From positions 1-64,000 of the IMG/VR virus record IMGVR_UViG_3300013094_000017: DNA of 64,000 nucleotides. One strand, written 5' to 3'. A model generated the notes under the pieces. That model saw only the letters and a list, made by a program, of their open reading frames with translations, ran no database searches and was not told where the DNA came from. Below, piece after piece: positions 21,603 through 55,572 of the stretch (position 1 is the stretch's first letter; each line of letters starts with the position of its first letter). The translations under genes and the position numbers were made by a program.

Positions 21603-22373
21603 ATGTCAAAATATTATGTGTACGAATATCGCCATCCACTAACAAATATTCCGTTCTATGTAGGTAAAGGAACAGGAACTCGTATGTACAAACACTTAAA
21701 CGAAACTAAAGACAATACAGAAAATTACAAGAAGTGGGCATATATACAAGGGTTGCGAAACAAAGGATTAGAGCCTATAATAGTAAAAGTATTTGAAACT
21801 GATTCGTCTACCGATGCGTATAATGAAGAAACAAAATTGATAAAACTTTATGGTAGAAGAGATATAGACGAAAACGGAATTCTAACTAATATATGCGAAG
21901 ATAATAGGCCACCTAAGACTACTGGACCCAGAAGTGAAGAAACAAAATTAAAGATGTCTCTTGCTAAAAAAGGAAAACCCAACCATCAATTAGGGTTAAA
22001 GAGGTCTAAAGAAACTAAACAGAAAATAAGTTTAGCCAATAAGGGCAAGCCCGGCACAATGACAGGCAAAACACACACTGAAGAAACTAAACAGAAAATT
22101 GCTAACTCAAATAAAGAAGCGTGGACAGAAGAAAAGAGAGAAGAAGCAAGTAACCGAATGTTAGGTAAACAGTTTACAGAAGAACACAAACAGAAATTGT
22201 CAGAGTCGCATAAAGGGAACATTGCGTCTGATGAGACAAAACAAAAGATGAGCAATGCTCAAAAATTAGCAAGTGTATCAAGAAGTAAAATAGTATCAGA
22301 AAAACTTAAAGGCAAACCGTGGTCAGAAGCACGCAGAGCTGCACAACTTAAAAGGAAAACAAATGGGTTATAA
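21603..22373 (+). CDS. GIY-YIG homing endonuclease with NUMOD3 repeats
   Basis: YYVYEY...FYVGKG...R, with repeated (H/R)SEETKxK(I/M)S. TAAATA at 21578. Confidence 0.88.
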   Translation: MSKYYVYEYRHPLTNIPFYVGKGTGTRMYKHLNETKDNTENYKKWAYIQGLRNKGLEPIIVKVFETDSSTDAYNEETKLIKLYGRRDIDENGILTNICEDNRPPKTTGPRSEETKLKMSLAKKGKPNHQLGLKRSKETKQKISLANKGKPGTMTGKTHTEETKQKIANSNKEAWTEEKREEASNRMLGKQFTEEHKQKLSESHKGNIASDETKQKMSNAQKLASVSRSKIVSEKLKGKPWSEARRAAQLKRKTNGL

Positions 22374-24273: not shown

Positions 24274-25295
24274 AAAAAATTGGCTTTGCTTGTAAGTGGA
24301 TTGACAGTACAGATCAGGTTAATGGTATTAAACCTACAGATGATGCTAAACAGTACAATACTGGTAGCACTACTGTGGCTTGGCTTAATCGACAAACACG
24401 TGATGTAGCTGAACAAAAGCTATGGGACCTAATGGTCCAAAATATCGAAAGTACACATAAATTAATCAACAAGGTTGGAGCATTAGATGAATCGCTTAGG
24501 ATGGTTCGTATCAGCAGTGATATATTACCAGTATATACAGAGTCTACTTGGAGTTATTTTTGGCGCCGCCCTGACGTCCGCAATTATTGTGAACAAGCGT
24601 TCGCTCAAGTGGGTAGCAGTGCTCGTAGCCTTGGGGTGCGCTTATCTTTTCATCCGGGTCAATTCACTGTTTTGGCAAGCGACAATCCAGACATTGTCCA
24701 GCGCAGCATAGAAGAGTTTGAATACCATGCAGACATGATTCGCATGATGGGCTATGGTCAAAAGTTCCAAGACTTTAAATGTAACGTGCATATTGCAGGT
24801 CGTCTAGGCTATCAAGGTATACTAGATGTGTACCCTAAACTAAGTGTTGAAGCACGTAACACTATTACTATTGAAAACGAGGAGATGAAACATGGTCTTG
24901 ATGATTGCCTCAATCTTGTCGATACTTTACCTATTGTTCTTGATATCCACCACCATTGGGTCCGCGAAGGGCATTACATTGATCTTAAGGATGCCAGAAT
25001 TGCACGCATTCTTGACAGTTGGCGCGGCCTGCGTCCTACGCTACACTATTCTGTATCCAGAGAAGACGTTCTCACCGCTCATTCATCTAGTACAGCTCCT
25101 AACCACAGCCTACTACTAGAGCAAGGCTACAAGAAAAGTAAGATGCGTGCGCACAGTGACTTCTATTGGAATACTGCGGTCAATGATTGGGCTCTTAGTT
25201 TCTTAGACAAGTTTGATATCATGTGCGAGGCAAAAGGAAAAAATTTAGCATCGTTTGCTCTTCACACTCGTGCTAAGGAACTTGGGCTCGTTTAG
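24270..25295 (+). CDS. uvsE: UV DNA damage endonuclease (UVDE)
   Basis: IGFACK, RISSDILP, RLSFHPGQFTVLAS, IENEE, VLDIHHHW, LHYS and RAHSD. Confidence 0.92.
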   Translation: MKKIGFACKWIDSTDQVNGIKPTDDAKQYNTGSTTVAWLNRQTRDVAEQKLWDLMVQNIESTHKLINKVGALDESLRMVRISSDILPVYTESTWSYFWRRPDVRNYCEQAFAQVGSSARSLGVRLSFHPGQFTVLASDNPDIVQRSIEEFEYHADMIRMMGYGQKFQDFKCNVHIAGRLGYQGILDVYPKLSVEARNTITIENEEMKHGLDDCLNLVDTLPIVLDIHHHWVREGHYIDLKDARIARILDSWRGLRPTLHYSVSREDVLTAHSSSTAPNHSLLLEQGYKKSKMRAHSDFYWNTAVNDWALSFLDKFDIMCEAKGKNLASFALHTRAKELGLV

Positions 25296-25851
25296 CTTCC
25301 CAATATTTGAGCATAGATTGTCGTTTCTTTTCTAATGCTTCAGGTGTATGTTTTCTACCTTTGTTTGATTTTCCTAACTCAGAAACTTGCTTCTTTCTAT
25401 CAAGATTATCTACCCAATTTTTCTTAGAAGATTCTGTCCAGACTTTTTGATGTTCTTCACTTCTCGGTTTTGGAATACCTTTACAAGATTCTGATAAATT
25501 CTTTTTGTGCTCGTTGCTGCGTGGGGGTTTTTTGGTGCCTGTTAGTTTCTTGCTAATAACATCTCTTACCTCTTGACTTGGTGATTGACCATCTCCACCA
25601 TATGTTAAGTTTACAAGAGATCCACCATCTTGTTTTAGCCCATATTGCTGTATGAGTTTTTTCTCTAGATCAAATGCTTCTTTTTCAGATAAGTGCTCGT
25701 AAAGAATTTGTATCTTACTATCATCTTTAGGTTTAATGTCAGCACCATTAGATCTTTTATGCGATACCCACGCACGATCTAATTTACCTTTTCCGATGTA
25801 GTAAGGTGTGTTATCTTCTCTTATATATTGATAAACGTAGTAAATATTCAT
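25273..25851 (-). CDS. GIY-YIG homing endonuclease with NUMOD3 repeats
   Basis: YYVYQY...PYYIGKG..R. TAAATA at 25857-62 on the - strand. Convergent and overlapping the uvsE end. Confidence 0.85.
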   Translation of the reverse strand: MNIYYVYQYIREDNTPYYIGKGKLDRAWVSHKRSNGADIKPKDDSKIQILYEHLSEKEAFDLEKKLIQQYGLKQDGGSLVNLTYGGDGQSPSQEVRDVISKKLTGTKKPPRSNEHKKNLSESCKGIPKPRSEEHQKVWTESSKKNWVDNLDRKKQVSELGKSNKGRKHTPEALEKKRQSMLKYWEAKRAQVP

Positions 25852-25887
25852 ATAGTTATTTATCACATTATGTGTGAAACTAAACTT

Positions 25888-38873: not shown

Positions 38874-39095
38874 ATGAAAAACCATTGTCAGGATATTCAA
38901 ATAATGTCATCACCTAACACAGGTAGTATTACATTCGCTCCTTCCGGGGATGGCGAAGTGCCAATGTTAAGGATTGGACCAGACGGCTTCTATGTGCGTG
39001 GTGTTAAGGTGCCGGTAGATGAGAACGAAAGTATGGCTGTATTCAAAGCATTCAAGCAGTGGATGGTAGAGGTAGAATTAAGGAGACCCTATTGA
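38874..39095 (+). CDS. Hypothetical protein
   Basis: ORF track. Confidence 0.6.
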   Translation: MKNHCQDIQIMSSPNTGSITFAPSGDGEVPMLRIGPDGFYVRGVKVPVDENESMAVFKAFKQWMVEVELRRPY

Positions 39096-39571
39096 TATTC
39101 AATAAAGTAAAAGATCTTAAAGACCAAGGCAAAAAAATTGGTATTGTGTTCAGCACCTTTGATATGTTACACGCTGGGCATATTGCTATGTTAGCAGAAG
39201 CAAAGAATCACTGTGATTATCTAATTGCTGGATTACAAACTGATCCAACATTAGATCGCCCAGACACAAAGAATCCTCCAGTGCAGAGCATTGTAGAAAG
39301 ACAAATTCAATTAAGTGCTACACGATTTGTTGACGAGATTGTAGTCTATCAAACTGAACAGGATCTTGTTGACCTATTGCTTATTCTGCCAGTTGATGTT
39401 AGAATATTAGGTGAAGAATATAGAAATGTAGACTTTACAGGCAAGGGCGAATGTGTTGTACGTGGTATTGAAATCATCTACAATGAACGCTCACATTCAT
39501 TTAGTTCAAGCAGTTTACGCAAGCGTGTAGCACATGCAGAAACAACTAAACTTTTAAGGAGTGCAAAATGA
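39059..39571 (+). CDS. TagD-like cytidylyltransferase (true start probably near 39092)
   Basis: FDMLHAGH (HxGH), LQTDPT, ER..QL, RxH.FSSS.LR. Confidence 0.85.
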   Translation: MDGRGRIKETLLIFNKVKDLKDQGKKIGIVFSTFDMLHAGHIAMLAEAKNHCDYLIAGLQTDPTLDRPDTKNPPVQSIVERQIQLSATRFVDEIVVYQTEQDLVDLLLILPVDVRILGEEYRNVDFTGKGECVVRGIEIIYNERSHSFSSSSLRKRVAHAETTKLLRSAK

Positions 39572-47317: not shown

Positions 47318-49588
47318 ATGTTAGAACCAAATAAAGATTTAGCACGCATCTTTGAAAACGCAATTACTGAAGCTAGCGTTAGAAATCACGAATATCTTAC
47401 CCTTGAACACTTCCTATATGGTCTAGTAATGGATAAGAAATTTGCTGCCTTATTAGATGAATACGGTGCCGACGTAGGTGAACTACGCAGCGACCTAACT
47501 ACTTTCATCGATGAAAACCTAAGAGACATTGCAAACTTACCAGAAGGTGCTCGTCCTAAGAAAACCAACACTATCGAACGTATGTTAAATCGTGCATTTA
47601 CACAGGTGTTATTCAGCGGTCGTCAACTTATTGAACCAGTCGATTGTATGATCAGTTTGTTCTCAGAAAAACAAAGTCACGCAAATTACTTTATGCGCAA
47701 GGCCAATATTGAAAAAGATACGTTCTTAGAATTCGTAACTAAAGAAACAGATATCGTTGAAGAAAAAGAAGGCGCAAGTGAAGTATCAGATCGTCAACTT
47801 GAAAAATTCTTAATTCAATATTGTGCTAATCTTACAGCCAAAGCTAAATCAAAACAAATTGATCCAGTCATTGGCCGTGAAAAAGAAATTGAAGAACTTA
47901 CATTAATCCTAGCTCGTCGACATAAATCAAACGTTATGTTAATTGGTGATCCAGGTGTAGGTAAGACTGCTATTGCAGAAGGAGTAGCACGTAAGATTAT
48001 CGAAGGTAATGTTCCTAACTTTATCAAAGACCATTCTGTATATTCATTAGATATTGGTGCAATGTTAGCTGGTAGTAAATATCGCGGTGATTTTGAAGAA
48101 CGTCTAAAGAATGTTATCTCAGCACTTGAAAAGAAAAAGAATTGTATCTTATTCATCGACGAAGCACACATGATGTCAGGTGCCGGCGCAGTTAGTGGCG
48201 GAGCAAATGATATGAGTAACATGCTTAAACCTGCACTAGGTAAAGGTACTATTAAAGTTATTGCTAGTACCACTTGGGAAGAGTTCCGTAAACACTTTGA
48301 AAAAGATCGCGCTCTAATGCGCCGCTTCCAAAAGGTTATGGTTAATGAGCCAGATGAAGCAACCTGCATTAAGATTGTCAAGGGCCTACGCAAGTATTAC
48401 GAAAAACATCATAATGTTAAGATTACTAATCAAGCTATTATTGATTCAGTTAAGTACAGTACAAAATATATGAGCGATAAGAAGCTTCCAGATAAAGCAT
48501 TTGACTTGATTGACTGTGCAGGCGCTCGATTTAAAATGCGTGATGAAGAAGGTGGCATTGTTGATCACGATGAAATCTTGTTTGAAGTTAGCCGTATTAC
48601 AGGTCTTCCGTTAGATCAAATTGCTGCTAAAGAAAACAAAAACCTACGCGATCTTGAAAAGAATATGAAAAACAAAGTGTTTGGCCAAGAAAAAGCAATT
48701 GAAGTATTGTTAGATAAGATCTTTATTGCACAAGCAGGATTGAAATCATTGAACAAGCCAATTGGTAGTTTCTTATTTACAGGGCCAACAGGTGTTGGTA
48801 AGACAGAGGCAGCTAAACAACTAGCGGCTAATATGAATGTTGAACTTGTACGTTTTGACATGAGTGAATACCAAGAACAACACTCAGTGGCTAAGTTTAT
48901 TGGTAGCCCTCCAGGTTATGTAGGATTTGAAGATAATGCCGGTCAGTTAGTTACTAAACTACAAGAACATCCAAATGCTATCTTGTTGTTTGATGAAGTA
49001 GAAAAAGCACACCCAAGTGTGTTAACTATCTTGTTAGGCCTAATGGACAATGGGTTTGTTACCGGTAGTAATGGTAAGAAAGCAGACGGTCGTAACTCGA
49101 TTATTATTATGACCAGTAACTTAGGTGCCAGCGATGCTGAGAAGAACAGTGTCGGTTTTGGTAGTTTAGAGCGTGATGGTGACCCTAAGGATGCTATTAA
49201 CAAGTTCTTTGCTCCGGAATTCCGCAATCGTTTAGATGGTATGATCCGCTTTGGCAAACTTGATCACGAAACAATGGTTAAAGTTGTTAAGAAATTCATG
49301 GACGATCTTAATGTATTGGTTAAAGAACGTAATGTACATGTTAAACCTACAGTTGAAGCAGTTGAATTCTTAATTAAGAAAGGATTTGACAGCAAGATGG
49401 GTGCTCGTCCATTGCAACGTACTATTGATGAGTTTATTAAGAAACCGTTGAGTAAAGAGATCTTATTTGGTCGACTAGTAAACGGCGGCATTGTTGAGAT
49501 TGGTGCTACTGATACTGAACTTACTTTAAACTATGTTGATGTGCTGCCATTGTTGGATAAGCCAAAAGCAGTTGAAGAAAGTCAATAA
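47318..49588 (+). CDS. clpA: ATP-dependent Clp protease ATP-binding subunit
   Basis: Clp-N domain and two AAA+ modules (GDPGVGKT, GPTGVGKT). GYVGF pore loop, VGF ClpP-docking loop and GARP. Confidence 0.93.
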   Translation: MLEPNKDLARIFENAITEASVRNHEYLTLEHFLYGLVMDKKFAALLDEYGADVGELRSDLTTFIDENLRDIANLPEGARPKKTNTIERMLNRAFTQVLFSGRQLIEPVDCMISLFSEKQSHANYFMRKANIEKDTFLEFVTKETDIVEEKEGASEVSDRQLEKFLIQYCANLTAKAKSKQIDPVIGREKEIEELTLILARRHKSNVMLIGDPGVGKTAIAEGVARKIIEGNVPNFIKDHSVYSLDIGAMLAGSKYRGDFEERLKNVISALEKKKNCILFIDEAHMMSGAGAVSGGANDMSNMLKPALGKGTIKVIASTTWEEFRKHFEKDRALMRRFQKVMVNEPDEATCIKIVKGLRKYYEKHHNVKITNQAIIDSVKYSTKYMSDKKLPDKAFDLIDCAGARFKMRDEEGGIVDHDEILFEVSRITGLPLDQIAAKENKNLRDLEKNMKNKVFGQEKAIEVLLDKIFIAQAGLKSLNKPIGSFLFTGPTGVGKTEAAKQLAANMNVELVRFDMSEYQEQHSVAKFIGSPPGYVGFEDNAGQLVTKLQEHPNAILLFDEVEKAHPSVLTILLGLMDNGFVTGSNGKKADGRNSIIIMTSNLGASDAEKNSVGFGSLERDGDPKDAINKFFAPEFRNRLDGMIRFGKLDHETMVKVVKKFMDDLNVLVKERNVHVKPTVEAVEFLIKKGFDSKMGARPLQRTIDEFIKKPLSKEILFGRLVNGGIVEIGATDTELTLNYVDVLPLLDKPKAVEESQ

Positions 49589-49622
49589 AGGTAGCATAAA
49601 TACTGCATCAGGATAATATACT

Positions 49623-50042
49623 ATGCCAGCATTAAGCTCACCATTTACTTTCATTATTAACTCAGGTACTTTCACTGCTACCTCAGTCGTTATACCATCA
49701 GCGGCTTATGCACCAGATGGAAGTACACTGTTTAACTCAATACCAGAAAAAGGCGATGGCTATTTCGGAGCCGCAGACGGTTTACACACAGTAACCTACA
49801 CAGTGACTCCGAATTTTGCTGGTACACTGACTATGCAGGCAACATTAGCAGTTACTCCAGTCGAATCAGATTGGTTTAATGTGGCTAACACTTCAGTAGA
49901 ATATGTTTGGCCTATTGTGCCGGCAACAACTACAACCAACTACTGTAACTTTACAGGTAACTTTGTTTGGGTGCGTGCGCAGGTATTCCGCACAGTTGAC
50001 CAACCAAACGGCACCTTAGAGTTTATCAACTATAACCACTAA
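49623..50042 (+). CDS. Probable virion structural protein
   Basis: Thr/Asn-rich beta-sandwich-like; TAAATA at 49597. Confidence 0.65.
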   Translation: MPALSSPFTFIINSGTFTATSVVIPSAAYAPDGSTLFNSIPEKGDGYFGAADGLHTVTYTVTPNFAGTLTMQATLAVTPVESDWFNVANTSVEYVWPIVPATTTTNYCNFTGNFVWVRAQVFRTVDQPNGTLEFINYNH

Positions 50043-50089
50043 TTGTTTCTTCGAATAAAACAGTATAAATACTCCATCGGAGTATTAAT

Positions 50090-50485
50090 ATGAAATTATA
50101 CGAATTTTTTGGTGTACCAACTTACGAATCAGATCCAGACAAAGATAGTCGGGATGACGTAAATGGACAAACACAAGCAGATAAAGATAAACTTGCCGAC
50201 GAAGTATATTGGTATATCTTAGATCACGATCAATTACACAAAGACTATTTCGTTCCATTAGCGAAAGAAATATCAGACAAACAAAAAGCAAAAGAGTTTG
50301 ATCACGGTGGTTACATTAAGAAGTGGATGCCGATGATTAATAAAGGTTGCATGGAGTTCTATAAAGAAGCTAAAATGGATCGTGATCCAAGAGACATTTT
50401 TCCTTTAGATATGCGTAAAGCATTATGTCATAGAATAGCAGAACAACATCATACTGATATAGAACAAGGTGCATACAAGACATAA
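50090..50485 (+). CDS. Hypothetical late protein with capsid-targeting-like N-terminus (MKLYEF)
   Basis: ORF track; TATAAATA at 50064. Confidence 0.75.
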   Translation: MKLYEFFGVPTYESDPDKDSRDDVNGQTQADKDKLADEVYWYILDHDQLHKDYFVPLAKEISDKQKAKEFDHGGYIKKWMPMINKGCMEFYKEAKMDRDPRDIFPLDMRKALCHRIAEQHHTDIEQGAYKT

Positions 50486-51468
50486 TGCTATTATCCGAAT
50501 TATTCCACCATAAAAAGAAACTAATAGAAGGCGGCAACGTATTTGCAGGCAAGACCACCTCTATTAAGCTCGAACACATTAAACCAACTTTAGATGCGTA
50601 CTTTGCAGAATTAAAACATCTGTTCCCAAAGAAAGCAGGCATATTTAACGAACAACATTTTGTTCCGCTCGGTTCAGTTGGTAAGAAAGCAGTATCAGGT
50701 GACATTGATCTTGGTGTTAGTGCCAGTGAACTTGTTGATAAAGAAATGAGCGATGCCAGTATAGCCGAATGGGGTATTGATCCCAAAGATGTTGCAGCAG
50801 AAGCAGAAGCCTTGCAAAAACGTGCTAGAAGTTCTACTCCAGAACAATCACGCATGAAAGCATTTAATAAATGCCTAGTACGTTATATTAATGCACATGC
50901 CCCGACATTACACTGCGATGAAACAAAAGTAACCAACGGTAATCTATTTGGATTATTTCCGCAGATAGACGAACAAGGCAATCACGTGGGCAGTGGTGTG
51001 CAAATTGATTGGATGATTGGAGATCTAAATTGGCTACGTTTCAGCTATCATTCAGCAGCATATCCAGAAGGGTCTAATGTTAAAGGTCTACACCGTACGC
51101 AATTAATGTTATCAGCGTTCCAAGTGGCAGGACTATCATTTAATCACGTTGATGGTGTTAAAGATAAAGCAACTGGAGAGATTATTGCTCGGGATCCAGA
51201 TCAAGCATTGACCATACTAGGACAACGTCTAGGATTTAAGATAACACAAGCAGATGCAGAAGATTATTATAAACTACATAATCTATTCAAAGCAAAAATG
51301 CGCCCAGAAGAATATAGTGCATTGCTAAACATCTACTTTAAGATATTAGACAGTACTCGCGCAGATATTCCTGACGATTTACAAGACGAATGGCGCAAAC
51401 GTCAATCGGCATTGGGCCTAACAGGTAAGTTCCTACCTGATAATTCAGCATTAAAGGTGAGACAATGA
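50485..51468 (+). CDS. Pol-beta-superfamily nucleotidyltransferase-like protein
   Basis: LGSVGKK..SGDIDL plus distal VQID; leader MLLSELF...LIE|GG. Confidence 0.7.
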   Translation: MLLSELFHHKKKLIEGGNVFAGKTTSIKLEHIKPTLDAYFAELKHLFPKKAGIFNEQHFVPLGSVGKKAVSGDIDLGVSASELVDKEMSDASIAEWGIDPKDVAAEAEALQKRARSSTPEQSRMKAFNKCLVRYINAHAPTLHCDETKVTNGNLFGLFPQIDEQGNHVGSGVQIDWMIGDLNWLRFSYHSAAYPEGSNVKGLHRTQLMLSAFQVAGLSFNHVDGVKDKATGEIIARDPDQALTILGQRLGFKITQADAEDYYKLHNLFKAKMRPEEYSALLNIYFKILDSTRADIPDDLQDEWRKRQSALGLTGKFLPDNSALKVRQ

Positions 51469-54416
51469 GCGGAGTGGCCGGGGCAGATCGCATAAAGAGT
51501 CGTAACGATTTCAAGCAATTTCTTGCTTCCTATCAAAAACTGATTGCAAAGTTTCCTGGCTTTGTGTCAATGAACACCAGCGGAAGTTATAACAGCGATC
51601 CAAGTAAAAATGATTTTGGTGATATTGATCTTATTGTACACATTAAGTCAGATAAAGATAAACCTACTGTAAAGAAAGAACTACAAGCGTTCTTACAAGC
51701 ACAACCAGATACAGTTATTGTTCCGTTTACATCAGAGAAGCATGCCGGCAAACGTTCATACAATGCAGGTGAGCTAGTATCAGTTCGATATCATGATGAT
51801 CAATTAGGGTATTCGGCACAGATTGATAATATTGTTGCCCTAGACGAATCTGAAGCATCATTCAAGCAACAGTTCTTAGATTTGCCTGCTGAAAAGCAAG
51901 GACTAATTCTAGGCCTAGTTAAGATTGCTACAATTGAAACAGATCCTCAGAGGTTATTCAAAAGCCTGGGCATTACTGCACCGGTGCTTACACAACCAAA
52001 TGAAGAATACGAGTTTAATCTAAGCTCAGTTGAACTACAATTACGCAAGGTTACTTACAAACCAGGTACCTACGAACAAATTGGTCGCGAAGTTATTTGG
52101 ACTAGTCGCAATTTTGACGATCTAAAGAAAGTATTATATCAATACAACCTAGATGCAGACTTTGATACACTGTTAGCACGTAGCAAACAGGTAATCAAAA
52201 ATCCACGTAGCAATGCTCGTATGCAGGGTGTGTTTAGTAGTATGATTACAGTTAAATCAGGCGAGGTTGGCACTGCCAAAGGTGCCGGCAAAGAGGCTGC
52301 ATTGGGCAAAATACAACAAACATTCCGCGAAGATGTATTCAAATGGACTGATTATGAAAATATAGACAACATGGATGATAGACTACATCTTGCCGAAACG
52401 TATTTTACAACTAATGATAATTTATTTGAATCCAATGAGTCCCATGCTACTAATTATTTCTTAAGTTTACGATCAGATGCTAATAATCCAGAAAAAAATA
52501 AAAAATATATTACAGTACTATTAGGATTAGTAGGTAATAGAATTATAAAAATGCAACCAATAGAATTTGGCACTTTTATAAAAAAACAAAACGATATATT
52601 CTATATTCAATATGATAACGGTCAGATAGCAAAATTTCCGTCCGAATCAACTCAAACTAAATTAATAGCAAAAACATTTCTATTCGATACTGTTCCTTCA
52701 TATGATAAATTTAGGTCAGAAATTATGATGAAATTCAATACATCACTTCCTCCGGTTAATGAAAATCACAAGGACTACAGCTCAAAAATAAAAGAAAGCC
52801 GCTTGCTGAGAGAGATGATCAAACCACAGGCAAACACAGTGGTTTTTGCATTTGGTCGTTTTCAACCGCCTACAATTGGTCACGAGTTGCTCATTAATAC
52901 AGTAAAGAACACCGCGGCAGGAAAGAGCGCAGATTACGTCATTTATGCTTCAAAAACACAAGATTCTAAGACAAATCCATTGTCAATTAATCAAAAAATG
53001 CACTATTTAAACCTGGCATTTCCAGGTACTAACTTTGCTGCCGCTAATGCCGAAGTACGTACATTTATAGAGGCAGCAAAGATCCTTAATAACCGATATA
53101 AGAATCTTATTATGGTAGCTGGTTCAGATCGTGTACAAGCATTTGAAGAAACACTAAACAAATACAATGGCACCGAATACAATTACGATACAATCAAAGT
53201 AGTGTCAGCAGGTGAGCGTGATCCAGATTCAGATAGTGCAGCAGGTATGAGTGCAACTAAAATGCGCGAAGCCGCAGTAGCAGGTGATCTAAAACTGTTT
53301 ATGAGTGGCCTCCCAAAAACTATCGGTACTAAGGATGCCGAACAGTTGATGAAAGATATACAACAAGGATTGGTTAAACAACCAAAGACTAATATGAAAG
53401 CAAAAGAAATTACTCCAGTGGCAGAAGGCAATGAAATGTCAGATGCAGCACAGGCTAGAGAATTGATCGGTCGTGCTATGTCCAATCGCAATGAACGTCA
53501 AAAGTATTTTGACTTTATTAAATTCTTAATTAAAAAGAACGGCAAGGATTATGGTATTCAAGTACATCAACTTGCAACTAAGTTAGCCAAAGAAGGCCAA
53601 GATGGTATGGCAGGTGTAGGTATGGGCAACTATATTGTAGACAAAAGCACAACTAACGAACACATCGTTAAACACGGTAGTGGTTATAGATTGGTTAGTA
53701 AAAAGACAGGTAAGAACTTAGGTGACTTTCCGACTCGTGCTGCCGCAGAAAAACACGAACGAGAAGTACAATACTTTAAACATGCCGGTGAAAGTGTAGA
53801 AACAGACGAAGCAGCAGCGTGGCAAAAATCGTCAGGTAAGAATAAGAACGGTGGCCTTAATAAAAAAGGAGTTGCCAGTTATCGCAGAGAACATCCTGGT
53901 AGCAAACTAAAGACAGCAGTGACCAAAAAGCCTAGTGAATTAAAAGCAGGTAGTAAAGATGCTAAACGTCGCAAGAGTTTTTGCGCTCGTATGAAAGGTA
54001 TGAAGAAACATAACACTAGCTCTAAAACAGCACACGATCCAGATTCACGTATCAATAAATCACTGCGTAAATGGCACTGCGAAAGCATTGAAGAAATGGC
54101 ACAGATGATTGAGAACGCAGAACGTTTCTTAGCCGAAGCCAAGGTCGAAGAAAAGTGGACTAAGAAATACAAAGACAGTATCAACTGTTCTAATCCTAAA
54201 GGCTTTAGTCAAAAGGCACATTGCGCAGGTAAAAAGAAAAACGAAGAAACAGAGATGGAAGAAGCTAAACAACGTTTAGATCCAAAGTGCTGGAAAGGTT
54301 ATAAGAAACAAGGCACTAAGATGAAAGGCAACACTCGTGTAAACAACTGTGTGCCGGTAGACGAAAGCGTAGAAACTACTATAGCTAAACTTATTAAACT
54401 ATTAGAATCAAAATGA
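51465..54416 (+). CDS. Multidomain protein: Pol-beta NTase + HxGH cytidylyltransferase/NMNAT-like domain + basic head-protein-like modules
   Basis: GSYNS...GDIDL...AQID, FGRFQPPTIGH...GSDR...SAG.RD...MSATKMR, and C-terminal AAWQK...KNKNGGLN.KG and CWKGYKK.G...NCVP modules. Confidence 0.75.
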   Translation: MSGVAGADRIKSRNDFKQFLASYQKLIAKFPGFVSMNTSGSYNSDPSKNDFGDIDLIVHIKSDKDKPTVKKELQAFLQAQPDTVIVPFTSEKHAGKRSYNAGELVSVRYHDDQLGYSAQIDNIVALDESEASFKQQFLDLPAEKQGLILGLVKIATIETDPQRLFKSLGITAPVLTQPNEEYEFNLSSVELQLRKVTYKPGTYEQIGREVIWTSRNFDDLKKVLYQYNLDADFDTLLARSKQVIKNPRSNARMQGVFSSMITVKSGEVGTAKGAGKEAALGKIQQTFREDVFKWTDYENIDNMDDRLHLAETYFTTNDNLFESNESHATNYFLSLRSDANNPEKNKKYITVLLGLVGNRIIKMQPIEFGTFIKKQNDIFYIQYDNGQIAKFPSESTQTKLIAKTFLFDTVPSYDKFRSEIMMKFNTSLPPVNENHKDYSSKIKESRLLREMIKPQANTVVFAFGRFQPPTIGHELLINTVKNTAAGKSADYVIYASKTQDSKTNPLSINQKMHYLNLAFPGTNFAAANAEVRTFIEAAKILNNRYKNLIMVAGSDRVQAFEETLNKYNGTEYNYDTIKVVSAGERDPDSDSAAGMSATKMREAAVAGDLKLFMSGLPKTIGTKDAEQLMKDIQQGLVKQPKTNMKAKEITPVAEGNEMSDAAQARELIGRAMSNRNERQKYFDFIKFLIKKNGKDYGIQVHQLATKLAKEGQDGMAGVGMGNYIVDKSTTNEHIVKHGSGYRLVSKKTGKNLGDFPTRAAAEKHEREVQYFKHAGESVETDEAAAWQKSSGKNKNGGLNKKGVASYRREHPGSKLKTAVTKKPSELKAGSKDAKRRKSFCARMKGMKKHNTSSKTAHDPDSRINKSLRKWHCESIEEMAQMIENAERFLAEAKVEEKWTKKYKDSINCSNPKGFSQKAHCAGKKKNEETEMEEAKQRLDPKCWKGYKKQGTKMKGNTRVNNCVPVDESVETTIAKLIKLLESK

Positions 54417-54688
54417 AACAGTTCTACATTACCAAAGAAAATATAACACAAAATCATCCAGATGATTGCTATCTTGCTCCTGAGGATCCTATCCAAGAAT
54501 TAAAGATTGCTGCTATGATGGGTGGTCTTGGTGCACAGGCAAGGCTCGACGAATATAAAGCAAAGGTAGCCGAGACAAATAAGGTAAATACTGGCAGTAT
54601 CGACAAAGCCAAATATATGAAAGATAACAACATCAAGCCCGGCACGCCTGCCTGGTTTGAGCTATGGTTTGGCAGACAAGGAAAATAG
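54413..54688 (+). CDS. Hypothetical protein
   Basis: ORF track; IKPGTPAWF.LWF motif. Confidence 0.7.
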   Translation: MKQFYITKENITQNHPDDCYLAPEDPIQELKIAAMMGGLGAQARLDEYKAKVAETNKVNTGSIDKAKYMKDNNIKPGTPAWFELWFGRQGK

Positions 54689-54689
54689 A

Positions 54690-55055
54690 ATGAGAGCATA
54701 CGAATTTATGAGAGAAGCCCGCGACTTTAAGGGCGGAAAAGGAATGAAATCAGATCAATCTGGCGCTATTCCAAACTCGCATGTTTATCCAGAATTAGAC
54801 AATAGTTCAGGATATATGGCCTATAGATTTGGAATAGCCTTAGCTGGTATGCCTGATCAAAAGATGGATGTCGCTGGCCCAACTGGATTGAAACTAGTAT
54901 CTATCGGATACACACCAGCAGATGAAGAAATCCTGCAAGCAGCAGCAGATTTAATCGGAACTCCGCGTGTTCGCTTAACTCCAAATGGTAGTACTGAATC
55001 ACCAGGCACTAACTCTGCTAGCCCAGTTCCAGATAGGAAGAAATTAAAGAAATGA
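54690..55055 (+). CDS. Hypothetical protein with capsid-targeting-like N-terminus (MRAYEFMRE)
   Basis: Start at the ATG after the AAGGA RBS. Confidence 0.7.
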   Translation: MRAYEFMREARDFKGGKGMKSDQSGAIPNSHVYPELDNSSGYMAYRFGIALAGMPDQKMDVAGPTGLKLVSIGYTPADEEILQAAADLIGTPRVRLTPNGSTESPGTNSASPVPDRKKLKK

Positions 55056-55510
55056 AAATAAACGAAATCTTAGAAGCACAAGAACGTCCATTGCCTAAAA
55101 CTGATCTACGTGTAGGCGATCATGTTACAGCAGACACAAGCAAAGAACAATATCCAGGTGGTCATAAATCACGCACGGGCAAAGTAACCCGTGTTGGACA
55201 AACTGGTGTACACATTCAACCAGATGACGGTGGTGAGCGTGAATATCATCCTTACAAGATCGTAAAGAAAACTTCAGGGGTAGAAGAATCAGCAACAGCA
55301 GGTGCTACATCAAGCGGCTCTATTGCAACTGTGGTAAATCCGCAACTTAGTCCAGGTAAAGCACGCGGTAAGAAATCTTACACAGGCAGTCCAGGTCAAA
55401 GTGGTACTAAAGCACCACCGCAACCTAAACCGAAAGCACAAAAACCAACAGATAATGCATTGAATATGAAAGGTACTAGCATATTCGGTGGTCCAGCAAT
55501 TAAACGATAA
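55052..55510 (+). CDS. Hypothetical protein (MKINEILE leader, SH3/KOW-like insert)
   Basis: ORF track. Confidence 0.7.
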   Translation: MKINEILEAQERPLPKTDLRVGDHVTADTSKEQYPGGHKSRTGKVTRVGQTGVHIQPDDGGEREYHPYKIVKKTSGVEESATAGATSSGSIATVVNPQLSPGKARGKKSYTGSPGQSGTKAPPQPKPKAQKPTDNALNMKGTSIFGGPAIKR

Positions 55511-55543: not shown

Positions 55544-55572
55544 TTGACCTTTCCTTTTCAACCCTATATACT
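55544..55572 (+). promoter_or_regulatory. sigma70-type promoter overlapping a hairpin
   Basis: TTGACC-N17-TATACT; AAAGGTCA/TGACCTTT inverted repeat. Confidence 0.7.

What the first reader, a model, noticed from the sequence alone, without database searches (positions are those of the whole stretch)
50064..55510. Late operon of probable capsid-packaged proteins containing two tandem Pol-beta nucleotidyltransferases and an HxGH transferase
Seen: after TATAAATA, consecutive ORFs start MKLYEF, MLLSELF..LIE|GG, MKQFYITKE, MRAYEFMRE and MKINEILE. Two adjacent ORFs carry GS-x(n)-GDID plus a distal Asp (50485 and the N-terminus of 51465). The second is fused to an FGRFQPPTIGH cytidylyltransferase/NMNAT-like domain. 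Established: T4 internal proteins use an MKTYQEFIAE-type capsid-targeting leader cleaved after Glu. Pol-beta NTases include CCA/tRNA-modifying enzymes, cGAS/DncV-like synthases and AMPylators, and NMNAT-type enzymes serve phage NAD-reconstitution pathways. Inference: an injected enzyme payload acting in the first minutes of infection (tRNA-end repair, NAD rescue, or host protein/RNA nucleotidylation). This could be an undescribed counter-defence or takeover system.
Basis: partly seen in the sequence, partly recalled or inferred. Interest (0 to 1): 0.75.

Follow-up and report, generated by a model that had tools for sequence, protein, structure and literature searches.

The report
Head-packaged polymerase-like enzymes of a jumbo phage
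A giant T4-like phage appears to load its capsid with two DNA-polymerase-beta-like enzymes and an NMNAT-like transferase, each tagged with a cut-off address peptide like that of T4 internal proteins, so it may inject ready-made enzymes with its DNA.

Summary
ORF1 to ORF6 (50090-55510) form one tight operon. It lies behind an intergenic TATAAATA and ends before a sigma-70-like promoter that serves the DNA polymerase genes.

ORF2 and the first 289 residues of ORF3 are confident Pol-beta-superfamily folds (pLDDT 96.6 and 93.7). Each has an invariant GS...DxD...D set. Their best structural matches are family X DNA polymerases (palm plus thumb, including ASFV Pol X), not CCA-adding enzymes or cGAS-type enzymes. 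ORF3 also holds an HxGH nucleotidylyltransferase, a basic DUF6321 module and other basic modules.

The packaging idea gains strong comparative support:
- The contig encodes a T4 gp21-type prohead protease, a scaffold and a gp23-type capsid protein.
- In the >1800-member ORF2 family, leaders vary in length or are absent. When any sequence precedes the core, the residue before it is Glu in 50 of 56 cases, and P3 is L/I/V in 46 of 54. This is the gp21 I/LxE site.
- The same site marks the natural ORF1-ORF2 and ORF2-ORF3N fusion junctions.
- Homologues of the HxGH domain in cultured cyanomyoviruses carry T4-CTS-like leaders and have been detected in virion proteomes.

The biochemical role is unresolved. 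ORF3 and ORF4 lack the leader. I judge this a new variant of T4-type internal-protein cargo.

The parts
49595..49602 (+). CATAAATA late-promoter-like motif, 20 nt before the 139-aa ORF 49623-50042
49623..50042 (+). 139-aa ORF upstream of the operon, conserved in synteny. It has weak PHROG matches to a virion structural protein family. It has no leader.
50064..50071 (+). TATAAATA, T4-late-promoter-like, intergenic, 18 nt before the ORF1 ATG, with a GGAG between them
50090..50485 (+). ORF1, 131 aa, of unknown fold. The leader-like start M[KL]LxEFFG is conserved in its family. An ORF1-like domain is fused in frame to ORF2 in ~440-aa relatives, and the junction is a ..[LIV]xE|GGNVF site.
50485..50529 (+). 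ORF2 leader, residues 1-15 (MLLSELFHHKKKLIE). It is the predicted propeptide and ends in L-I-E before the conserved GGNVF.
50530..51468 (+). ORF2 mature domain (residues 16-327), here called NTase-A. It is a family-X-like palm plus thumb with a C-terminal helical part. Invariant residues are G63 S64 D73 D75 Q173 D175, and KGLHRTQL is nearly invariant.
51465..52331 (+). ORF3 residues 1-289, here called NTase-B. It is a second family-X-like palm plus thumb with invariant G40 S41 D53 D55 D121. It starts at the mature core, MSGVAGA.
52332..52796 (+). ORF3 residues 290-444, an insert absent from most homologues and of unknown function
52788..52820 (+). Leader-like internal linker IKE|SRLLRE|MI. It corresponds to the N-terminal leader of free-standing HxGH proteins.
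52821..53426 (+). ORF3 residues 453-654, a HIGH-signature (HxGH) nucleotidylyltransferase. TIGH is at 52872-52883 and a GMSATKMR motif lies near the end. It is homologous to the cyanomyovirus 'cytitidyltransferase' (T4-GC190).
53835..54074 (+). DUF6321 module (ORF3 residues 791-870), pI 10.4
54078..54365 (+). Basic Cys-containing modules (KCWKGY...NNCVP), shared with many ORF3-family proteins
54366..54416 (+). Conserved C-terminal helix after PVDE| (SVETTIAKLIKLLESK). It is a possible C-terminal targeting peptide or propeptide.
54413..54688 (+). ORF4, 91 aa. It has no CTS-type leader. Its C-terminal NIKPGTPxWFxLWF motif also ends some ORF3-family polyproteins.
54690..55055 (+). ORF5, 121 aa. 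The leader MRAxEF[IM]xE is conserved across divergent paralogues.
55052..55510 (+). ORF6, 152 aa, with leader MKINEILE. Residues 78-95 repeat the capsid protein's predicted maturation site, and the tail is basic (pI 10.9).
55544..55572 (+). Sigma-70-like promoter TTGACC-17-TATACT, which starts the next unit (91-aa ORF plus PolB). It marks the 3' limit of the operon.

Best explanation
ORF1-ORF6 is a late-transcribed operon of T4-type internal head (ejection) cargo.

Proposed steps (all inferred unless stated):
1. ORF1, ORF2, ORF5 and ORF6 carry an N-terminal capsid-targeting-type leader.
2. ORF3 is a chain of modules: PolX-like NTase-B, an insert, an HxGH nucleotidylyltransferase, basic DUF6321 and Cys modules, and a conserved C-terminal helix.
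3. These modules are joined by leader-like linkers that hold (L/I/V)xE sites.
4. During head assembly the proteins would enter the scaffolding core.
5. The phage's Peptidase_S77 (gp21-type) prohead protease would remove the leaders and cut the chain after Glu.
6. The mature enzymes would stay in the head and leave it with the DNA.

What is shown: the folds, the invariant catalytic residues, the promoter-like motif, the presence of the protease, scaffold and capsid genes, the cleavage-site statistics in homologues and natural fusions, and (from the literature) virion detection of homologues of the HxGH module.

What is inferred: actual packaging, cleavage and ejection in this phage, and all activities.

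The most likely activity of the two PolX-like enzymes is nucleotidyl transfer to nucleic-acid 3' ends. This could be gap filling or end processing of the incoming genome before replication, as proposed for the virion-packaged Pol X of ASFV. The HxGH enzyme would make an adenylylated or cytidylylated cofactor, and NAD is the leading guess. I put this functional part at about 0.3.
For: Late expression:
- NATAAATA is confined to intergenic sites before ORFs, including head genes and this operon.
- A gp55-like sigma candidate is present.
- A separate sigma-70-like promoter follows the operon.

T4-type head machinery in the same contig:
- Peptidase_S77 scores 94 bits and Gp23 scores 266 bits. A portal gene, an 80-aa leader-bearing ORF in the gp67/68 slot and a scaffold gene are also present.

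Cleavage signature:
- Among 50%-identity representatives of the ORF2 family, 41 start M-GGNVF and 56 have preceding sequence.
- In those 56, P1 is Glu in 50, and P3 is L/I/V in 46 of 54.
- The same ..[LIV]xE| precedes the core at 15 natural N-terminal fusion junctions, about 10 of them with an ORF1-like domain, and at 18 ORF2|ORF3N fusion junctions. It also ends the short leaders of some ORF3N homologues.
- Some leaders are near copies of the T4 CTS (MKTFAQYLAE|GG against MKTYQEFIAE; PMC8442874).
- gp21 cuts after Glu in I/LxE motifs (PMC12991175, PMC5694885).

HxGH module:
- It is 36-47% identical to proteins in 565 phage records.
- S-CREM2 gp154 and S-SCSM1 ORF91 were found in virion proteomes, and NMNAT-like proteins are also reported there for S-SZBM1 and S-CBWM1 (PMC10665884, PMC9602691).
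- These proteins start MKNFSSFLTE|A, MKSFLQFLKE|A and MRFRQFIIE|A.
- A DUF6321 protein of P-SSM7 starts MKTYSQFIEE|G.

Folds:
- ORF2 matches family X polymerases at Z 7.5-9.5 over 160-184 residues. The next class reaches at most 6.6, over the palm only.
- ORF3N matches them at Z 10.7-11.8 over 163-183 residues.
- Pfam DNA_pol_B_palm is matched by the second domain of distant fused relatives.

Linkage and composition:
- ORF2 and ORF3N are adjacent in 75 of 80 viral loci and are fused in about 18 proteins.
- The ORF3 and ORF6 tails have pI 9.4-10.9, against a genome median of 5.6. T4 internal proteins are also basic.
- Peptidase_S77 is present in 5 of 5 other records that hold an ORF2 homologue.
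Against: - There are no proteomic or N-terminal data for this phage or any close relative.
- ORF3 and most of its homologues have no N-terminal leader, so their route into the head is unexplained. The conserved C-terminal helix or piggy-backing on ORF2 are guesses.
- The ORF2+ORF3N complex prediction gave no answer.
- About 42% of ORF2-family representatives lack any leader. These include the only cultured carrier, Flavobacterium phage immuto, even though it has the protease. Packaging is therefore not universal in the family.
- In immuto and in many contigs the pair sits among replication genes (primase, exonuclease, PolB).
- The structural TM-scores to Pol beta are only 0.3-0.45, and no fingers or 8-kDa domain was found.
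- The leader regex was defined post hoc.
- The authors of the cyanophage proteomes caution that abundant non-structural proteins can co-purify with virions.
Confidence: 0.6

Rival explanations
1. The enzymes are ordinary cytoplasmic replication or repair accessory proteins (PolX-like gap fillers plus a cofactor-making transferase). They are expressed near PolB and are not packaged. The N-terminal peptides are merely a shared amphipathic helix or an expression feature.
For: The locus lies between a ClpA-like gene and PolB. In immuto it lies beside primase and exonuclease. Many family members, and ORF3 itself, have no leader. The fold family is a DNA repair polymerase.
Against: An expression feature or a shared helix does not explain three things: Glu at P1 and L/I/V at P3 exactly at the core boundary, the same site at internal fusion junctions, and the leader-less variants that start at exactly that boundary. 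A late-type promoter precedes the operon, and a separate sigma-70-like promoter serves PolB. HxGH homologues are found in virions (PMC10665884, PMC9602691).
Confidence: 0.2
2. The payload's main purpose is NAD rescue. The HxGH domain would be an NMN adenylyltransferase, injected to rebuild NAD against NAD-depleting defences (a NARP2-like logic). The PolX-like domains would be accessory.
For: Profile matches to archaeal NMNAT, NadM/NadR and PPAT have E 2e-6 to 1e-3. Homologues are annotated as NMNAT and this role is proposed in the cyanophage literature (PMC9602691, PMC10665884).
Against: Specificity is not established. NCBIfam NMNAT scores 13.6 bits against a cut-off of 112, and the best PDB profile hit is MJ0951 (UPF0348). 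No Nampt (PF04095) was found in the 259 kb held. The most conserved feature of the locus is the PolX-like pair (75 of 80 loci), which this reading leaves unexplained.
Confidence: 0.15
3. The two NTases are signalling-nucleotide synthases or sponges (cGAS/DncV-like), or tRNA 3'-end (CCA) repair enzymes that counter tRNA-targeting defences.
For: They belong to the general Pol-beta superfamily. CD-NTases, OAS and TUTases appear lower in the structural lists.
Against: Those classes align only over the ~100-residue palm. For ORF2 they reach Z 6.6 at most, and for ORF3N they reach Z 10.3 at most over shorter lengths. Family X polymerases align over palm plus thumb (160-184 residues). No CCA-adding enzyme appears among the top 50 in either search.
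Confidence: 0.05

Closest known systems
T4 internal proteins IPI/IPII/IPIII and Alt (CTS-directed head cargo cut by gp21)
   Same: Both have an N-terminal ~10-residue leader of the MKTYQEFIAE type that ends in I/LxE. Both have a gp21-family protease, a scaffold and gp23-type head genes in the genome. In both, late-type promoters, basic cargo modules and a hypervariable cargo locus are seen.
   Different: The cargo here is two PolX-like nucleotidyltransferases and an HxGH transferase, not small inhibitors or an ADP-ribosyltransferase. One cargo protein is a 983-aa multi-module chain with internal leader-like linkers and a conserved C-terminal helix. Packaging is not shown experimentally.
Cyanomyovirus 'cytitidyltransferase' / NMNAT-like virion-associated protein (T4-GC190; S-CREM2 gp154, S-SCSM1 ORF91, Syn9 gp184)
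   Same: The HxGH domain is homologous (36-47% identity, E down to 2e-44). Both have a leader of the same type, and a DUF6321 protein lies nearby.
   Different: In cyanophages it is a free-standing protein preceded by a DUF6267 gene. Here it is fused behind a PolX-like domain and the DUF6267 slot is taken by the PolX-like pair. The published work reports virion detection, but the passages read here do not mention a targeting leader or cleavage signature.
ASFV Pol X (O174L), a minimal family X polymerase packaged in the virion core with other repair enzymes
   Same: Both have a palm-plus-thumb-only architecture (ASFV Pol X aligns over 163 of 176 residues, Z 9.2 and 10.9). Both fit the idea of a polymerase carried in the particle to act on the viral genome before replication (PMC12172490).
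   Different: There is no detectable sequence similarity. Here there are two different PolX-like proteins with extra helical parts. The virus is a tailed phage with a different packaging route. The activity is unknown.
phiKZ / SPN3US ejection proteins matured by the prohead protease
   Same: Both are jumbo phages that package many enzymes, including polymerase subunits, which are processed after Glu by a gp21-related protease (PMC5694885).
   Different: Those phages use AxE/SxE motifs and long propeptides, and their cargo is a multisubunit RNA polymerase. Here the motif is I/LxE and the leader is the short T4 type.

Membership tests
T4-type CTS-bearing internal head proteins | N-terminal ~10-residue leader resembling MKTYQEFIAE | tested here: met
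   ORF1, ORF2, ORF5 and ORF6 meet it. ORF3 and ORF4 do not. Family members include MKTFAQYLAE and MITFKEFITE.
T4-type CTS-bearing internal head proteins | Leader ends at a gp21 site, I/LxE followed by a small residue | tested here: met
   In ORF2 the site is L-I-E|GG. Across the family P1 is Glu in 50 of 56 and P3 is L/I/V in 46 of 54, and the fusion junctions are identical in type.
T4-type CTS-bearing internal head proteins | Genome encodes a gp21-family prohead protease with a scaffold and a gp23-type capsid protein | tested here: met
   Peptidase_S77 scores 94 bits and Gp23 scores 266 bits in G000. The protease is also present in 5 of 5 other carrier records.
T4-type CTS-bearing internal head proteins | Protein physically present in the mature head with the leader removed | not testable with these tools
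   The only evidence is indirect: HxGH homologues are in cyanomyovirus virion proteomes (PMC10665884, PMC9602691).
Family X DNA polymerases | Pol-beta palm with GS motif and three catalytic carboxylates | tested here: met
   The residues are invariant in both families. The models are confident.
Family X DNA polymerases | Thumb domain contiguous with the palm, giving a palm-plus-thumb structural match | tested here: met
   The top 8-9 non-redundant PDB matches are all family X, aligned over 160-184 residues, with Z 7.5-11.8. TM-scores are only 0.3-0.45.
Family X DNA polymerases | Sequence-profile membership (Pfam DNA_pol_B_palm / thumb) | tested here: not met
   There is no Pfam hit for ORF2 or ORF3N. 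Only distant fused relatives P0327 and P0262 reach PF14792, at 27.5 and 25.7 bits.
Family X DNA polymerases | Fingers (HhH) and 8-kDa domains; template-directed DNA synthesis | not tested
   No such domain was recognised. Activity needs an assay.
HIGH-signature nucleotidylyltransferases (PF01467) | (H/T)xGH motif and a C-terminal ISxTxxR-like motif in a Rossmann-like domain | tested here: met
   TIGH is at residues 470-473 with an invariant His. GMSATKMR has an invariant Ser. Pfam scores 21.7 bits against a cut-off of 21, or 25.2 bits in the genome scan.
NMN/NaMN adenylyltransferase (NMNAT) | Equivalog-level match or demonstrated substrate | tested here: not met
   TIGR00482 scores 13.6 bits against a cut-off of 112. 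The profile hits to NMNAT and PPAT are weak and mixed.
NARP2-type NAD reconstitution | Nampt together with NMNAT | tested here: inconclusive
   No PF04095 was found in the 259 kb held, but the contig is about 73% complete.
cGAS/DncV-like or CCA-adding nucleotidyltransferases | Best structural match over the whole catalytic core | tested here: not met
   CD-NTases and OAS match over the palm only and rank below family X. No CCA-adding enzyme is in the top 50.

The most novel reading that the evidence does not exclude
The two PolX-like proteins are a new class of injected polymerase. They would be made as precursors or polyproteins and released by the prohead protease, which creates their strictly conserved GG and SG N-termini, possibly as a zymogen-like activation step. 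They would be ejected with the genome to extend, tail or repair nucleic-acid ends in the first moments of infection. The conserved C-terminal helix of the ORF3 family would be a second, C-terminal capsid-targeting signal.
Probability: 0.25. Interest if true: 0.85.

Novelty: new variant of a known kind. Interest (0 to 1): 0.66.

Why it matters
T4-type capsid targeting is known for a few small inhibitors and for Alt. If this reading holds, the same route delivers polymerase-like and cofactor-making enzymes in a very large, uncultured group of aquatic T4-like phages. The ORF2 family has more than 1800 proteins, 347 IMG/VR stretches encode a relative, and complete genomes are about 354 kb.

It would also explain why 'cytidylyltransferases' keep appearing in cyanophage virion proteomes. 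It offers a simple sequence rule for predicting head cargo from genomes alone: a leader plus I/LxE at a conserved core boundary. And it supplies natural targeting peptides and multi-module cargo designs for protein packaging.

Tried and rejected
- BLASTP and hhalign between ORF2 and ORF3N gave no significant similarity beyond the GS..DID motif. They are not recent paralogues.
- The ORF2+ORF3N complex prediction scored 0.00 and the tool gave no verdict. I do not use it as evidence.
- Pfam, PHROGs and NCBIfam gave nothing for ORF1, ORF2, ORF4 or ORF5.
- The Atlas gave no lead for ORF1.
- A single-sequence PDB search with the HxGH domain gave only noise. The profile search gave weak superfamily hits.
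- hhalign of both NTase profiles against cyanophage DUF6267 (Syn9 gp183) found no relation.
- The raw count of TATAAATA is below expectation, so I replaced that argument with the positional one.
- A link between the locus and immuto's 7-deazaguanine DNA modification was considered. The paper gives nothing to support it.
- A simple terminator scan found nothing convincing within the operon.
Full report
**Setting**

The window is the first 64 kb of a 259,419-bp IMG/VR viral contig, which CheckV rates 73% complete. Complete relatives that carry the same locus are about 354 kb.

The contig has a T4-type head module:
- a portal gene;
- an 80-aa ORF in the gp67/68 position that starts MLLNEFMYF;
- an acidic 320-aa ORF;
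- a Peptidase_S77 (gp21-type) protease, 94 bits;
- a scaffold gene;
- a gp23-type capsid protein, 266 bits.

A gp55-like late sigma candidate is also present.

**Observation**

They overlap or abut from 50090 to 55510.

TATAAATA lies 18 nt before ORF1. Taken as a plain count the octamer is not enriched. However, 26 of 31 NATAAATA sites on the + strand are intergenic in a genome that is 93% coding. They sit just before ORF starts, including head and tail genes, the upstream ORF at 49623, and ORF1.

After ORF6 there is an 85-nt spacer with a sigma-70-like promoter that serves a 91-aa ORF and PolB. The operon is therefore a separate transcription unit of the late type.

**The two nucleotidyltransferases**

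*Homologues and conservation*
- ORF2 has more than 1800 metagenomic homologues, and none is annotated.
- An alignment of 69 diverse members keeps G63, S64, D73, D75, Q173 and D175 invariant in full-length numbering.
- The ORF3 N-terminal 289 residues form a second conserved domain with invariant G40, S41, D53, D55 and D121.

*Structure*
- AlphaFold models are confident, with pLDDT 96.6 and 93.7.
- For both, the top non-redundant PDB matches are all family X DNA polymerases: Pol beta, lambda, mu, TdT, bacterial PolX and the 174-residue ASFV Pol X.
- These matches align over palm plus thumb, 160-184 residues. Z is 7.5-9.5 for ORF2 and 10.7-11.8 for the eight best ORF3N matches (Pol mu 9.3).
- TUTases, poly(A) polymerases, OAS and CD-NTases align only over the ~100-residue palm.
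- No CCA-adding enzyme appears in either list.
- In distant fused relatives the second domain reaches Pfam DNA_pol_B_palm.

*Relation between the two*
- The two domains are not detectably related in sequence.
- They are nevertheless adjacent in 75 of 80 viral loci, and fused into one ~612-aa protein in about 18 cases.
- A complex prediction gave no answer.

**ORF3 architecture**

Comparison with 120 homologues gives this layout:
- NTase-B, residues 1-289;
- a rare insert, residues 290-444;
- a leader-like linker;
- an HxGH nucleotidylyltransferase, residues 453-654;
- a variable middle part;
- DUF6321, residues 791-870;
- basic Cys-containing modules;
- a C-terminal helix preceded by P-V-D-E.

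The C-terminal helix is conserved whatever the preceding modules are.

The HxGH domain has the TIGH and GMSATKMR motifs. It matches PF01467 only marginally. Its profile matches to MJ0951, archaeal NMNAT, PPAT and NadM/NadR are weak. It is a member of that superfamily, but its substrate is unknown.

**Packaging signature**

This is the main result.

*ORF2 family*
- The sequence before the conserved GGNVF core varies from 0 to more than 200 residues.
- Among 50%-identity representatives, 41 start M-GGNVF and 56 have something before the core.
- Of those 56, the residue just before the core is Glu in 50. It is Met in five more, which are probably true starts.
- P3 is L, I or V in 46 of 54.
- Short leaders read M[KR]IxELLxE, and some are near copies of the T4 capsid targeting sequence (MKTFAQYLAE, MITFKEFITE).

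*Published reference points*
- The T4 sequence is MKTYQEFIAE. It is cut once and the cargo stays in the head (PMC8442874).
- T4 gp21 cuts after Glu in I/LxE motifs (PMC12991175; also PMC5694885).

*Fusion junctions and linkers*
- The same ..[LIV]xE| precedes the core where an ORF1-like or other domain is fused in front of ORF2.
- It also lies between ORF2 and ORF3N in natural fusions (..LTE|SGVAGA), and it ends the short leaders that some ORF3N homologues have (MLNE|SG, MISNE|SG).
- In ORF3 homologues the linker between NTase-B and the HxGH domain starts after [FL]xE.
- That linker usually ends in a second L[LIM]E. It reads like the leader of free-standing HxGH proteins (HRSLFRSLLE|A against MKKFSAFLTE|A).

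*What the pattern implies*
- A Glu is required only when something precedes the core. It is absent when the protein starts at the core.
- This is what a processing site predicts. It is not what a structural residue or a translation signal predicts.

*Within this contig*
- Leader-like N-termini are on 10 of 331 ORFs (P about 8e-9).
- Four of the ten are in this locus. Others lie beside the head genes.
- The capsid protein itself has ..YLGE|AATAG at the expected maturation position.

**Link to cultured phages and proteomes**

- The HxGH domain is 36-47% identical to the 'cytitidyltransferase' of cyanomyoviruses and relatives, found in 565 phage records.
- Published virion proteomes contain this protein in S-CREM2 (gp154) and S-SCSM1 (ORF91). 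NMNAT-like proteins are also reported in the S-SZBM1 and S-CBWM1 virions.
- The authors propose that it is carried in the particle. They also note possible co-purification (PMC10665884, PMC9602691).
- I found that these proteins start with T4-CTS-like leaders ending in xxE|A. A neighbouring DUF6321 protein of P-SSM7 starts MKTYSQFIEE|G.
- The module fused into ORF3 is therefore a member of a family with experimental virion association.

**Other ORFs in the operon**

- The ORF5 family keeps MRAxEFIxE in front of divergent bodies.
- ORF6 has MKINEILE. Further on it has VEE|SATAGATSSGSIATV, a near copy of the capsid protein's maturation site, followed by a very basic tail.
- ORF4 has no such leader. 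Its C-terminal motif also ends some ORF3-family polyproteins.
- The region between the HxGH domain and PolB is hypervariable among relatives, with these modules shuffled. This recalls the T4 internal-protein locus.

**Caveats**

- Nothing here is experimental for this phage.
- ORF3 lacks an N-terminal leader. The conserved C-terminal helix and association with ORF2 are only suggestions for how it might enter the head.
- About 42% of ORF2-family representatives have no leader. These include Flavobacterium phage immuto, which has the protease and keeps the pair among replication genes.
- Structural similarity to family X is moderate in TM terms. No fingers or 8-kDa domain was identified.
- No Nampt was found. 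A second, ordinary sugar-nucleotide-type HIGH transferase lies elsewhere in the window.

**Mechanism and verdict**

The best-supported reading is that this is a late operon of head cargo. The cargo would be addressed by T4-type leaders and matured by the gp21-type protease (confidence about 0.6).

What the cargo does is open. The palm-plus-thumb folds argue for action on nucleic-acid 3' ends. The closest precedent is ASFV Pol X, which is packaged with other repair enzymes and is thought to mend the genome before replication (PMC12172490). NAD synthesis by the HxGH domain is a reasonable but untested guess.

Relative to what is known, this is a new variant of CTS-directed internal proteins. The cargo enzymes are new, and so is the multi-module polyprotein format.

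Noticed in passing
window 55283-55336 (ORF6 residues 78-95) and G000:C1:131207-132382 (capsid protein residues 39-57): ORF6 holds VEE|SATAGATSSGSIATV, a near copy of the capsid protein's predicted maturation site YLGE|AATAGATSSGNVATL. No other ORF of the contig has the motif. In relative L037 the ORF6 homologue is just a leader, this motif and a basic tail.
   Followed up: partly
window 54366-54416 and the C-termini of P0121-P0214: ORF3-family proteins of very different module make-up end in the same amphipathic helix (..MxxLIKxLESK or ..INKIIVNEAIQNN), preceded by P[VIL][GSD]E. This may be a C-terminal targeting peptide or propeptide.
   Followed up: partly
G000:C1:247773-248453 (outside the window): An NT5C-like 5'-deoxyribonucleotidase carries the same leader (MRAREFIIE). 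In Flavobacterium phage immuto an NT5C gene directly follows the ORF2 and ORF3 homologues.
   Followed up: partly
window 47318-49588: The phage encodes a full-length ClpA-like double AAA+ ATPase (TIGR02639, 875 bits). It keeps conserved synteny just upstream of the locus in about 21 related contigs.
   Followed up: no
window 39059-39571: A second, canonical HIGH nucleotidylyltransferase (RfaE domain II / TagD-like, Pfam 40 bits) has no leader. It lies beside a GroES-like ORF and a clamp-loader gene.
   Followed up: partly
L096:300-1262, L006:2863-3792, L094:221-1414, L095:838-2085: In cyanomyoviruses and Methylophilales phage Melnitz a DUF6267 protein (KWDG motif) fills the slot before the cytidylyltransferase, where this phage has the PolX-like pair. 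The Melnitz copy has a leader ending ITE|D. The Atlas lists DUF6267 as a weak look-alike of ORF2, but hhalign finds no relation.
   Followed up: partly
window 21603-22373 (+) and 25273-25866 (-): GIY-YIG-like ORFs (N-termini ..YYVY.Y....IPFYVGKG) lie directly behind CATAAATA or GATAAATA motifs. They are probably homing endonucleases with late-type promoters.
   Followed up: no
L001:8908-11631 (immuto gp088): The immuto homologue of ORF3 joins NTase-B to a divergent HxxH transferase (GGFKPPHLAH) and a C-terminal part with HExxH-like motifs (HEMIHH, HEIEH). This is another cargo-module combination.
   Followed up: no
L007 (IMGVR_UViG_3300013093_000017, 229,675 bp): A second IMG/VR contig carries the whole locus and its flanks at 100% identity (tblastn protein matches).
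   Followed up: no
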